From Podarcis erhardii (taxonomy: Eukaryota), in assembly GCA_964252035.1 (NCBI GenBank), contig OZ176205.1: a stretch of DNA of 64,000 bases; one strand, given 5' to 3'. A program made the translations under genes and the position numbers. How positions within the stretch are numbered: the stretch's first letter is position 1; every line of letters starts with the position of its first letter. Below the pieces are notes generated by a model. It ran no database searches and was not told where the DNA came from. It saw only the letters and a list, made by a program, of their open reading frames with translations. Of the stretch, positions 2,336-5,300 are shown one piece after another.

Positions 2336-5300
2336 CTAACGATGGACCATAAAGGAAAATGCTGGGACAAATAAAATGGGAGAAAAAAAATCACAGCAGC
2401 AGCCGAATAAAACTAAAGGGGAAAAAAGAAAACCAAATGTCTCAATCAAAATAATAATAAATAATAATAAGTAATATTAGCACACATCTAATGTAGAAGA
2501 CACATACCATTTAAATATCCACCTGATGAAAATCCTATACCCAAATCTGTTCAAGAAATGTGGACACATTTAGCCACATTTGTTTCTTCAAGCAGCTAAC
2601 ATATGGAGACAACTGCTTATGTGAGTGATCAATTGTTGCAAGGCTGAATTTACCCAACGTGGTTCCTCTTTCACAAGTTGCAATTTTCCTGTTCATGGAA
2701 GGGATGAGGCAATTCCTAATTCAAAATAGAATGAGTGCACCTAGAATCTTTAGAACTGTAACTTTACAGTCTAAATCTTTCTACCCTTACAAGAGAAAAT
2801 ATACCCAAGCTTCTGCCCAAAGGAACAAACTGAAGACAGCTTCACTGAGGTTCTAAGGTGCTTTTTTTGCTCTGCTCTGCTCTATGCTCTATATTCTAAT
2901 TGCTCTACTAAGGCTTGTCCACCATTCCAAGCTACTATCCAATAGTGGCAAACATGCACATTTTGCAATCAGAATACAATGGTGATTAACAGGTATAAAC
3001 ACAGATGCTCTCTGTGATTATTTTAGGTTAGACCTATACTCCCAGTCATTAGTAACAGTTAAGATTTAGTGGCAGAAGCAGTTGGTAAAAGACTAGCATG
3101 CACTGGTGATAGTGAAAGCAGAAATTGCTCGAAACAAATTAAATTAAATTAAATTAAAAATTCCTTCCAGTAGCACCTTAGAGACCAACTAAGTTAGTTA
3201 TTGGTATGAGCTTTCGTGTGCATGCACACTTCTTCAGATACCAATAACTAACTTAGTTGGTCTGTAAGATGCTGTTGGAAGGAATTTTTGTTGTTGTTTT
3301 GTTTTGACTACGGCAGACCAACACGGCTATCTACCTGTAAGTAGAAATTGCTGTCACTTAACTTTTAAAGCTTGAGTAAAGTAGCAACTTTGAGGCGAAT
3401 TTTAATAGTGCACAAAACCAATTTACCTCAACCTAGTGGACTCCCAACTCCTATCAACTCCAGCCTGCCCAGCCAATGGTCAGAAGATGGTGGGAAATTT
3501 AATCCAAAACATCTGGAGGGCACCAGGTTGGGAAAGGTTGGTAAATGCTTTCTAGGATGCTGGCTACTTCAGGTGCTGTCAACCCTTCTACTTTGTAGAA
3601 GTTGGCGGTCAACACTATTTACACTCAGTCCTAATCCTTTTTGTGAAATCAATGACTTTTATTACAATTGGAGACCCCATGTCAGCAAAACCCATCTGGA
3701 CATTTTATCATAGTATTTAATGGGCAGTTATATATATTTTAATGAGTCACACTTGCTTCTCTCCACTGTCCTCTCAGGGAGTTTTGCGGACAACAGCCAG
3801 TGTAACAAAGCAGGGAACTGATTGGAAAAGTCACAAACTCCTTAGGGGCCCTAGAAGTTACACCCCACCTGGAACTGCTATCCTTAAGATCGGAAAGCAG
3901 GCTTGGGGCTCATGAGCAATGCTCCCAATGGTGGAGAGAGTGAGAAAAAGTTATTGACTGCATAGGAAATCCCATAGCTATTGGAGAGTGAGAACTTTCC
4001 AGCCCCTGAAGATTAAAATCTAATCTCCTGAATTTGAAACTGCATCAAGGCTGTCCTAAGGAATGGCAGGATATAAATTCAATTTGCAAAATAATTCCCA
4101 CCTTAGTTATACTAAGCCTTAAAGCAAGTTACTTTCTAGCAGTAACTTCCCAAAAGCTACTTTGTGAATTCTGGGCTGGATTTGAATTGAGGCCTCCAAC
4201 CAAAACCTGCACAATGTAGGCTCATCTTTGAAAGAAGATGCCTGTTTTCATCTATTTGCTTCAGCCTTCAGCCAGAACAAGTTAACACACAAGATTGTAA
4301 ATTAAAATGGATGTGAGGGCGATCTGGCTGCGACATCTGTCACCCCATTGATCGCCAGGGTTGATTCGGCTGATCTGGCTGGCTAGGCGGGTAAATTAAA
4401 ACAAGGGAACACTATATAGTACAACCAAAACTATGAATCCATGTGCCATTTAAATAATGGTAAGTCAACCATTTTCTGGTTGTTTGAAGTATTTGAAAGT
4501 TAAGTGATATCTGAATGTAATGAAAGATATATCTGCTGTCAGTGCTATTTATTTTTTTAAAGACTGTGTCTGCTGCCTACACGGACAAACATTAATTACA
4601 GTGGTGCCTCGCAAGACGAAATTAATCCGTTCCGTGAGGCTCTTCGTATAGCGGTTTTTTCGTCTTGCGAAGCAAGCCCATTGACAGCTTAGCGGATTAG
4701 CGCTATTAGCGGTTTAGCGGCTTTTAGCGGATCAGCTGATAAGCGGCTTATCAGCGGATCAGCTGACAAGCGGCTTAGGGCTTAGGAAAAGGGGGCGGGG
4801 GAGGGAAAAAACCCCGCACGAACTTGAAAGACATTATCATCTTGCGAAGCAAGCCCATAGGGAAATTCGTTTTGCGAAGCGCCTCCAAAACGGAAAACCC
4901 TTTCGTCTAGCGGGTTTTCCGTCTTGCAAGGCGTTCGTCTTGCGGGGCACCACTGTACTTCACTACAAAGCCTTTCCCATGGCAAGAAGCAGAAGTCAGT
5001 TGGAAGCAGCTAACCAACACAATGAATCAATTAAAATATTACAAGATTGTTGCATCTATATATCAACAATATAATTTGTGAACTGCTACTTAAGTAAAAA
5101 AAGAGTTGTTAGTAAACTCAAAGCAAAAGTAAACAGAGTGCATAGAAAGCCATAAGCAAAGAAAAGCATGCAGATCTCAGAAAAGAATGAATTTCAAGAA
5201 CTGACAAGTCCCAATACTGACCATACAGAAAAGGGAAAAGTTTGCTAACACAACCAACAGTGAACACAGCAAAAAGCCAAGTTTAAAGCAAAATCCAGAT

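What the first reader, a model, noticed from the sequence alone, without database searches (positions are those of the whole stretch)
3120..3352. TSD-flanked Penelope fold-back places an intact hammerhead ribozyme, sense to MAPK14, inside the minor (U12) intron
Seen: a 213-bp insert between perfect 10-bp TSDs. On the MAPK14-sense strand it reads CUGAAGA-A-GUGUGCAUGCACAC-GAAA-GC-UC^AUACCAA, a complete minimal type I hammerhead core with predicted cleavage between 3208 and 3207. A second, inverted copy of the element begins at 3238 with ATACCAA, exactly the first bases of the ribozyme's 3' cleavage product. This extends stem I from about 4 bp to 52 bp (the first 26 bp perfect). Established: Penelope-like elements carry minimal hammerheads whose stem III is a palindromic 4-mer (here AGCU) and which cleave mainly as dimers; p38-alpha output is limited by slow U12 splicing of this intron. 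Inference: the inversion point records ribozyme-cleaved RNA used as template during integration. The over-stabilised ribozyme could cut long-lived intron-retained MAPK14 pre-mRNA (via trans-dimers with other copies) or act as a long dsRNA/ADAR/Drosha substrate, coupling a retroelement ribozyme to p38 dosage.
Basis: partly seen in the sequence, partly recalled or inferred. Interest (0 to 1): 0.82.

Follow-up and report, generated by a model that had tools for sequence, protein, structure and literature searches.

The report
Ordinary Penelope retrotransposon fold-back in MAPK14 intron
A 213-base insert in the minor-class intron of a lizard's p38-alpha kinase gene is an old, typical two-armed insertion of a very abundant Penelope-like retrotransposon that carries a minimal hammerhead ribozyme motif, and nothing shows that it cuts the gene's RNA or alters its splicing.

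Summary
A 213-bp insert (3130-3342) lies between perfect 10-bp direct repeats. On the minus strand, which is the MAPK14 sense strand, 3237-3208 is a complete minimal type I hammerhead core with the predicted cut at 3208^3207. Two 52-nt inverted arms (48/52 matches, first 26 perfect) lengthen helix I. The host intron (8337-2336) is intron 8 of MAPK14 and has U12-type signals.

The layout is the published insertion signature of Penelope-like elements (PLEs). It consists of two 5'-truncated copies joined head to head, a 35-36-nt "tail" on one side only, and a target-site duplication (TSD). The family is very abundant: 9,000-16,000 contigs per run lie on it. The insertion is shared by taxa whose flanks differ by up to about 3%, so it is old.

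The junction sits in the 4 nt where the family's normal 5' end is complementary to the first bases after the cut site. Helix I pairing of two cDNA ends therefore explains it as well as a ribozyme-cleaved template does. Other copies show many different inversion points.

The core has no monomeric helix III, and published PLE hammerheads of this kind are inactive as monomers. No RNA reads were available. A link to p38 dosage is unsupported.

The scan has already noted many PLE hammerhead fold-backs elsewhere in this genome.

The parts
3120..3129 (.). Left target-site duplication, AGAAATTGCT
   Evidence: It is identical to 3343-3352. It may extend to 3113-3129 (15/17 against 3336-3352).
3130..3207 (-). 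Arm B: 78 nt downstream of the hammerhead cut site, in ribozyme sense. It ends in (AATTT)4GTTTCG and lacks the tail.
   Evidence: It matches the family consensus at the three sites where arm A differs (rows 3269, 3274, 3275).
3208..3237 (-). Minimal type I hammerhead core: CUGAAGA, an unpaired A, a 5-bp helix II with a CAUG loop, GAA, the palindromic AGCU, and C17. The predicted cut is 3208^3207.
   Evidence: The family varies within the core only at 3208 (C17 to U) and 3216 (C11.1 to U, giving a G-U pair), both compatible with a ribozyme.
3238..3241 (.). Junction zone. These 4 nt can be read either as the normal 5' end (GUAU) of the hammerhead-bearing copy or as bases +1 to +4 (AUAC) of the inverted copy.
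   Evidence: Alignments and joints of other copies end mostly at 3241.
3238..3342 (+). Arm A: an inverted, 5'-truncated copy of 105 nt counted from the cut-site position. It carries 3 private transitions relative to the family.
3307..3342 (+). One-sided 36-nt 'tail' that includes the AC-rich CAGACCAACACGG. Arm B lacks it.
   Evidence: tail alignment; high family depth at 3308-3331, with other copies ending at 3336-3346. Compare the 30-40-bp PLE tail in PMC8557442 and the two RT start sites in PMC11167929.
3343..3352 (.). Right target-site duplication, AGAAATTGCT
8338..8409 (-). MAPK14 exon 8 ([24 protein letters not shown])
   Evidence: identical to p38-alpha residues 205-227 in PDB chains. 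Exon order.
8329..8337 (-). U12-type 5' splice site, GTATCCTTT
2349..2357 (-). U12-type branch-site-like TTCCTTTAT. Its A at 2350 lies 14 nt before the last intron base, 2336.
2256..2335 (-). MAPK14 exon 9 (H)[26 protein letters not shown]

Best explanation
The insert is the product of a single, old retrotransposition event of a very abundant lizard Penelope-like element (PLE) family. It consists of two 5'-truncated copies of the element's last module, joined head to head.

The minus-strand copy runs from the family's usual 5' end, 4 nt before the ribozyme. It passes through the 30-nt minimal hammerhead core and ends 78 nt past the cut site. The plus-strand copy starts at the base of helix I and runs 105 nt, ending with a 36-nt tail that the other copy lacks.

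Inferred mechanism: both strands of a staggered, AT-rich target break primed reverse transcription, one from the inner and one from the outer RT start site. The two cDNA 3' ends were then joined through the 4-nt complementarity that is helix I of the ribozyme. That pairing places the seam next to the cut site whether or not the RNA had been cleaved.

Inside MAPK14 pre-mRNA the sequence is expected to fold into a 52-bp hairpin. Its apical ribozyme core lacks helix III and is inactive as a monomer. On this reading it is an inert intronic relic.
For: The structure is shown directly: the TSD, the arms at 48/52, and the different ends of the two arms. The motif matches the published PLE minimal-hammerhead features: an unpaired nucleotide after A9, a G10.1-C11.1 pair, and palindromic 15.2-16.2 (PMC4209133). 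The known PLE insertion signature is an inverted 5'-truncated copy adjacent at the 5' end plus a 30-40-bp tail at one end (PMC8557442). The anole Poseidon protein cleaves and extends both target strands, prefers AT-rich ATT sites, and starts reverse transcription at two internal sites that delimit the tail, in an AC-rich stem-loop roughly 85-90 nt past the cut site (PMC11167929). Here the AC-rich block lies at +77 to +90. On abundance and age, 9,237-16,098 contigs per DNA run lie on the element, and summed depth reaches 1e6-7e6 against 13-72 in the flanks. The insertion junctions are present in organisms B, C and E (X4 records 17 and 22; X8 records 25 and 30; X15 record 15). The family's 5' end lies at 3241. 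For inactivity, the fold shows no helix III, single minimal hammerheads are inactive in vitro (PMC4209133), dimers are needed and even these cleave slowly (PMC6765202), and no RNA-seq ends were found at the Poseidon cut site (PMC11167929).
Against: No RT or endonuclease ORF was linked to this family here, so PLE membership rests on the ribozyme type and the insertion architecture. No Rfam hammerhead model matches. The two-cDNA joining step is inferred from in vitro work on a different PLE. The left boundary lies in low-complexity sequence that the reads tool masked (3127-3164). No empty site was recovered. Inactivity was not tested: only assembled contigs were available, not raw RNA reads. Contigs from other copies carry the same seam without gaps (X4 records 18-20; X1 record 3). 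That fits recurrent helix I joining, but it also fits cleavage or an amplifying fold-back subfamily.
Confidence: 0.72

Rival explanations
1. One reading: the plus-strand arm was copied from an RNA that the hammerhead had already cut. Reverse transcription ran off at base +1, so the seam is a footprint of in vivo self-cleavage.
For: Arm A begins exactly at the predicted +1. Run-off on a cleaved template would give a cDNA 3' end able to pair directly with the full-length cDNA's 3' end, with no flap to trim. The same seam recurs in other copies (X4 records 18-20; X1 record 3). Other notes from the scan report seams at cut sites in this genome (s1-214984, s1-224433; not checked here).
Against: The seam is ambiguous over 3238-3241 because the family's 5' end is complementary to +1 to +4. 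Many other inverted arms start elsewhere, at about +57 to +77 (joints 3235-3243 to 3294-3314). Hammerhead-dead Poseidon templates insert normally in vitro, and no RNA ends were seen at the cut site in anole RNA-seq (PMC11167929).
Confidence: 0.25
2. Functional coupling: the ribozyme with its lengthened helix I cuts intron-retaining MAPK14 pre-mRNA, or the 52-bp hairpin is an ADAR, Drosha or dsRNA-sensor substrate that tunes p38-alpha dosage.
For: The motif is sense to the gene and the core equals the family consensus. The hairpin is very stable. Retention of the MAPK14 U12 intron lowers the protein level in mammalian cells lacking ZRSR2 (PMC8883539).
Against: There is no helix III as a monomer, and monomers are inactive in vitro (PMC4209133). 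A double hammerhead needs helix I and helix III formed between two RNAs, which a 52-bp intramolecular stem opposes. The predicted homodimer is an extended duplex without helix III. An intact 30-nt core is expected by chance about one time in three at the observed arm divergence of about 8%. The element is one of a very abundant family. It lies 794 nt from the 3' splice site and about 5 kb from the 5' splice site. The miRNA-model hits are far below their thresholds (46 vs 95 bits).
Confidence: 0.03
3. The fold-back unit is itself the master copy of a small non-autonomous subfamily, so the seam was inherited rather than made at this locus.
For: Other copies about 10% diverged carry the same seam without gaps. 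Both arms share the minority T at +8 (3200/3245), where most copies have G.
Against: Depth over 3260-3283 is only about 1-5% of that over the core. The two arms end differently, as expected from two priming events. A 52-bp hairpin is a poor template for reverse transcription.
Confidence: 0.1
4. Snap-back self-priming: a single cDNA folded back on its own helix I and copied itself.
For: The cDNA's 3' end (ATAC) can pair with its own internal GTAT across a 30-nt loop. The scan noted perfect palindromic PLE inserts elsewhere (s1-259088, s1-220647; not checked here).
Against: Self-copying would make the arms identical out to the target, but arm A has a different T-rich stretch and a 36-nt tail that arm B lacks.
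Confidence: 0.05

Closest known systems
Minimal hammerhead ribozymes of metazoan Penelope-like elements (Cervera & de la Pena 2014, PMC4209133; Lunse et al. 2017 as cited in PMC6765202)
   Same: It is type I, with the CUGANGA and GAAA boxes and an unpaired base after A9. It has the G10.1-C11.1 pair and a helix II of 5 bp or more. It has no real helix III, only the palindromic AGCU. It is very abundant and mostly found as solitary truncated copies.
   Different: Helix I is 52 bp here instead of about 4 bp, because an inverted copy abuts it. Helix II is a perfect 14-nt palindrome. Cleavage was not tested.
Poseidon_Ac (PAc) of Anolis carolinensis and its in vitro insertion mechanism (PMC11167929)
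   Same: Both target strands are cleaved and extended. The target is AT-rich. Two internal RT start sites delimit a 30-40-nt tail. An AC-rich block lies about 80-90 nt past the hammerhead cut site.
   Different: The ribozyme and flanking sequence differ: PAc reads CUGAGGA...GAAACGUC^AGGAG. No ORF from this family was seen here.
Complex tandem or inverted PLE insertions with a one-sided tail (Craig et al. 2021, PMC8557442; Evgen'ev & Arkhipova 2005 as cited there)
   Same: An inverted 5'-truncated copy lies next to the 5' end, there is a tail at one end only, and 5' truncation is heavy.
   Different: This is a mini-insertion of 213 bp with no ORF and no pLTR pair.
Non-LTR retrozymes of animals (PMC7229834; bioRxiv 10.64898/2026.07.22.740005)
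   Same: Both involve type I hammerheads of PLE origin in short non-coding units.
   Different: Retrozymes are direct tandem repeats with two or more ribozymes in one orientation and produce circular RNAs. Here there is one ribozyme and an inverted arm.
L1 twin priming inversions
   Same: A second priming event on the other target strand yields an inverted 5' part joined by microhomology, inside one TSD.
   Different: A different retroelement class and enzyme are involved. Here the microhomology is a ribozyme helix.

Membership tests
Hammerhead ribozyme, type I, minimal PLE variant | Catalytic boxes C3-U4-G5-A6-N7-G8-A9 and G12-A13-A14, an A15.1-U16.1 pair, and H17 at the cut site | tested here: met
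   CUGAAGA ... GAA-A-GC-U-C at 3237-3208 on the minus strand.
Hammerhead ribozyme, type I, minimal PLE variant | Helix II closed by G10.1-C11.1, with an unpaired base between A9 and G10.1 | tested here: met
   A, then GUGUG-CAUG-CACAC. The 5-bp stem appears in the MFE fold.
Hammerhead ribozyme, type I, minimal PLE variant | Helix I formed by the sequences flanking the core (at least 4 bp) | tested here: met
   26 perfect pairs and 48 of 52 overall. It would be about 4 bp in ordinary copies.
Hammerhead ribozyme, type I, minimal PLE variant | Palindromic 15.2-16.2 in place of a stable helix III (dimer-dependent) | tested here: met
   AGCU is present, and no helix III forms in the monomer fold.
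Hammerhead ribozyme, type I, minimal PLE variant | Match to curated Rfam hammerhead covariance models | tested here: not met
   No hammerhead family at E<=10 on 371 nt or on 58 nt. Minimal PLE motifs are known to need their own descriptor (PMC4209133).
Hammerhead ribozyme, type I, minimal PLE variant | Site-specific self-cleavage | not testable with these tools
   Only assembled contigs were available, with no raw RNA reads.
Penelope-like element insertion | Family encodes an RT plus a GIY-YIG endonuclease | not tested
   The insert is 213 bp with no ORF. No other copy could be fetched.
Penelope-like element insertion | An inverted 5'-truncated copy next to the 5' end of the main copy | tested here: met
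   Head-to-head arms 3207->3130 and 3238->3342.
Penelope-like element insertion | A 30-40-bp tail present at one end only | tested here: met
   3307-3342 (36 nt) is present in arm A and absent from arm B.
Penelope-like element insertion | Target-site duplication at an AT-rich site | tested here: met
   A 10/10 repeat containing AAATT. An empty site was not recovered.
U12-type (minor) intron | 5' splice site /RTATCCTTT | tested here: met
   GTATCCTTT at 8337-8329 on the minus strand, directly after exon 8.
U12-type (minor) intron | A TCCTTRAY-like branch site 10-15 nt from the 3' splice site, without a long polypyrimidine tract | tested here: inconclusive
   TTCCTTTAT has one departure from the consensus. 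Its A lies 14 nt before the last intron base. No position-weight scoring was run.
Non-LTR retrozyme | Direct tandem repeats with two or more hammerheads in the same orientation | tested here: not met
   There is one core only in the window, and the second arm is inverted and lacks the core.

The most novel reading that the evidence does not exclude
Seams of head-to-head PLE insertions, such as this one at 3237/3238, are genomic footprints of hammerhead self-cleavage in vivo. One arm would have been copied from the ribozyme's 3' cleavage product and the other from uncut RNA. A census of such seams would then give the first in vivo evidence that PLE hammerheads cut during retrotransposition.
Probability: 0.25. 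Interest if true: 0.55.

Novelty: new member of a known kind. Interest (0 to 1): 0.24.

Why it matters
The locus itself matters little. It is one old copy of a very abundant repeat in an intron. The wider point is methodological. In vivo cleavage by PLE hammerheads has never been shown, and the anole study found no RNA ends at the cut site (PMC11167929). If a genome-wide census showed inversion or duplication seams piling up at +1 beyond what helix I microhomology predicts, genome sequence alone would answer that question. This locus shows why such a census must control for the 4-nt helix I overlap.

Tried and rejected
- **Rfam:** the gathering scan of the whole window found only a 7SK fragment. 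E-value scans of 371 nt and 58 nt gave no hammerhead model, only sub-threshold miRNA-hairpin hits that reflect the long stem.
- **Other copies in the window:** none were found.
- Metagenome contigs and viral contigs gave 0 hits.
- **RNA-end test:** this was impossible. All 23 runs are held as assembled contigs and none is on record as RNA.
- **Empty-site test:** rows near the left junction were dropped because 3127-3164 was masked as a repeat.
- **Depth as copy number:** rejected as a measurement, because the tool warns against it. It is used only to say the family is very abundant.
- **Cofold of two copies:** this gives an extended duplex through the helix II palindrome, not a double hammerhead. 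It is thermodynamics only and not decisive.
- **DNA-transposon or MITE reading:** rejected, because the inverted repeats are internal and the termini are unrelated.
- **Comparison with the Poseidon_Ac consensus:** it is a different family.
- **Lunse et al. 2017:** the paper is not held, so it is cited only through PMC6765202.
- **Exons:** Read tools were kept off the exons and the 7SK fragment.
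Full report
**What is in the sequence.**
AGAAATTGCT occurs at 3120-3129 and again at 3343-3352, enclosing 213 bp. The repeat can be extended to 17 bp at 15/17 (3113-3129 vs 3336-3352), so the true target-site duplication may be 10 or 17 bp.

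On the minus strand, 3237-3208 reads CUGAAGA, A, GUGUGCAUGCACAC, GAAA, GCUC and is followed by AUACCAAU. That is a complete type I hammerhead core:
- C3 to A9 are present, followed by an unpaired base.
- Helix II is closed by G10.1-C11.1.
- G12-A13-A14 is present.
- A15.1 and U16.1 are separated only by the palindromic GC.
- C17 follows, so the predicted cut is 3208^3207.

A descriptor that I wrote for such minimal motifs finds this one site in the 64-kb window and none in 200 dinucleotide shuffles. The sequence from 3238 rightward on the plus strand and the sequence from 3207 leftward on the minus strand match at 48 of their first 52 bases, with the first 26 perfect. As RNA, the minus strand folds into that long helix I with helix II on top and no helix III, at -91 kcal/mol and z = -12.5. 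No Rfam hammerhead model matches, even at E<=10 on a 58-nt cut-out. The miRNA-model hits, at 46 bits against a 95-bit threshold, merely reflect a long hairpin.

**Gene context.**
The minus strand carries MAPK14.
- The frame at 8407-8339 is identical to residues 205-227 of p38-alpha in solved structures.
- Exons 1 to 9 can be placed in order at about 23790, 18600, 14600, 11170, 9940, 9375, 8870, 8409-8338 and 2335-2256.
- Exon 8 is followed directly by GTATCCTTT.
- Exon 9 is preceded by TTCCTTTAT, whose A lies 14 nt before the last base of the intron.

The 6,002-nt intron 8 (8337-2336) is therefore a GT-AG intron with U12-type signals, and the hammerhead is sense to it. MAPK14 is a recognised minor-intron gene, and retention of that intron lowers the protein level when ZRSR2 is lost (PMC8883539). 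The insert lies 794 nt from the 3' splice site and about 5 kb from the 5' splice site. I searched exons one at a time by reference and built no joined coding sequence.

**Anatomy of the insert.**
The two arms are not equivalent.
- Arm B (minus strand, 3207 to 3130) is contiguous with the ribozyme core. It ends after 78 nt in (AATTT)4GTTTCG.
- Arm A (plus strand, 3238 to 3342) lacks the core and is 105 nt long. After a different T-rich stretch it carries a further 36 nt (3307-3342) that arm B lacks. This extra stretch includes the AC-rich CAGACCAACACGG at +77 to +90 from the cut site.

The 5' ends of both copies therefore meet in the middle, and their 3' ends abut the target duplication.

**Comparison with known Penelope-like elements (PLEs).**
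This layout is the published architecture of PLE insertions:
- They show heavy 5' truncation.
- An inverted 5'-truncated copy lies next to the 5' end.
- A 30-40-bp tail is present at one end only (PMC8557442).

The in vitro work on the green-anole Poseidon element gives a mechanism (PMC11167929). The protein cleaves and extends both strands of an AT-rich target. It starts reverse transcription at two internal sites that delimit the tail, in an AC-rich stem-loop 111-118 nt into the ORF, which is about 85-90 nt past the hammerhead cut site. The geometry here is the same.

The sequence, however, is from a different family. Poseidon_Ac reads CUGAGGA ... GAAACGUC^AGGAG. The ribozyme features match those listed for metazoan PLE minimal hammerheads: an unpaired base after A9, a conserved G10.1-C11.1 pair, palindromic 15.2-16.2, and a short helix I (PMC4209133).

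**Family-level evidence.**
Public runs holding this locus are available only as assembled contigs. I laid four of them, from four coded organisms, on 2900-3600 at 80% likeness.

1. *Abundance.* 514 to 16,098 contigs per run lie on the element. Summed depth reaches 1e6-7e6, against 13-72 in the flanks. Depth is not a copy number, but the family is clearly very abundant.
2. *Shared insertion.* Contigs join unique flank to element in organisms B, C and E (X4 records 17 and 22; X8 records 25 and 30; X15 record 15). Their flanks differ from the window by about 1.5-3%. The insertion is therefore shared and old, which fits the 4 mismatches between the arms.
3. *Variation within the core.* The family varies at a share of 5-16% only at 3208 (C17 to U, still a permitted H) and 3216 (C11.1 to U, giving a G-U pair). 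Both changes are compatible with a ribozyme, whereas the arm positions 3196, 3200 and 3202 vary more. This locus has the consensus core. At about 8% divergence between arms, an unchanged 30-nt core is expected about one time in three, so it is not evidence of selection here.
4. *Arm differences.* Arm A carries three private transitions (3269, 3274, 3275) where arm B has the family letters. Both arms share a minority T at +8.
5. *Family 5' end.* In ribozyme sense, other copies stop resembling the window at 3241-3246. Most joints start at 3241, which is 4 nt before CUGAAGA.
6. *Other inversion points.* Many contigs join 3235-3243 directly to 3294-3314. These are head-to-head insertions whose inverted arm starts at about +57 to +77 instead of +1.
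7. *Recurrence of this seam.* A few contigs from other copies (10-12 mismatches, no gaps) run straight across the same seam (X4 records 18, 19, 20; X1 record 3).
8. *Back-joints.* Joints such as 3241 to 3193 indicate reiterated ribozyme tips in other copies.

**The seam.**
The seam is in fact ambiguous over 3238-3241. These four bases are both the normal 5' end (GUAU) of the core-bearing copy and bases +1 to +4 (AUAC) of the inverted copy, because that complementarity is helix I itself.

Two cDNAs of the same polarity can be joined only where the element is self-complementary. A full-length cDNA ends in ATAC, which pairs with GTAT in the other cDNA exactly at the base of helix I. The seam therefore falls beside the cut site with or without cleavage. 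Run-off on a cleaved template would give the same product without any flap to trim, so that route remains possible.

Several points count against the cleaved-template reading:
- Ribozyme-dead Poseidon templates insert normally in vitro (PMC11167929).
- No RNA-seq ends were found at that element's cut site (PMC11167929).

Simple snap-back of one cDNA is unlikely, because the arms end differently. A fold-back master subfamily is possible but minor, since depth over 3260-3283 is only a few percent of that over the core.

**Function in MAPK14.**
Nothing supports it.
- As a monomer the core has only A15.1-U16.1 around a two-base GC, which cannot form a hairpin.
- Single minimal PLE hammerheads showed no cleavage in vitro, and dimers cleaved poorly (PMC4209133, PMC6765202).
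- The anole ribozyme needed its own protein (PMC11167929).
- A double hammerhead needs helix III, and with it helix I, formed between two RNAs. A 52-bp intramolecular helix I should lock the RNA as a monomer. The predicted homodimer is an extended duplex through the helix II palindrome, without helix III.
- The hairpin could in principle be edited or bound by dsRNA-binding proteins. That holds for any of the many fold-back copies in introns, and it could not be tested because no RNA reads were available.

**Verdict.**
The identification as a PLE fold-back with a minimal hammerhead in the U12-type intron 8 of MAPK14 is supported. The cleaved-template inference is undecided, because an equally simple rival exists. 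The link to p38 dosage is unsupported.

This is a new member of a known kind. The scan has already recorded many PLE hammerhead fold-backs and cut-site seams elsewhere in this genome. The only point of wider interest is that a controlled genome-wide census of such seams could test in vivo hammerhead cleavage.

Noticed in passing
window 4335-4392 (+): Rfam 7SK match of 69.8 bits, covering model positions 27-84 with no mismatches to the consensus. It is a 7SK 5' fragment retrocopy in the same MAPK14 intron, antisense to the gene. The scan had already noted it as s1-237529.
   Followed up: partly
window 3428-3547: A second very abundant repeat about 85 bp from the insert. Summed contig depth reaches 7.8e5 against about 70 in the flanks, and the loose ends of other copies read ...GGCTGGGGCTGATGGGAGTTGTAG. 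It looks like a SINE fragment.
   Followed up: no
window 42178-43233 (-): A 352-codon stop-free frame with reiterated [16 protein letters not shown]-like units. It is probably a tandem repeat rather than a gene.
   Followed up: no
window 3127-3164: The (AATTT)4 low-complexity end of arm B was masked by the reads tool, so the left junction and any empty-site joint could not be evaluated.
   Followed up: partly
window 3193-3241, other copies: Contigs from other copies show back-joints (3241 to 3193, 3241 to 3212, 3224 to 3203) with short fillers. These are reiterated ribozyme tips of about 50-56 nt period, as in the scan note s1-263145 (table 5c).
   Followed up: no
window 23680-23790 (-): MAPK14 exon 1 begins [38 protein letters not shown], preceded by a GC-rich stretch with an open frame, consistent with a CpG-island promoter.
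   Followed up: no
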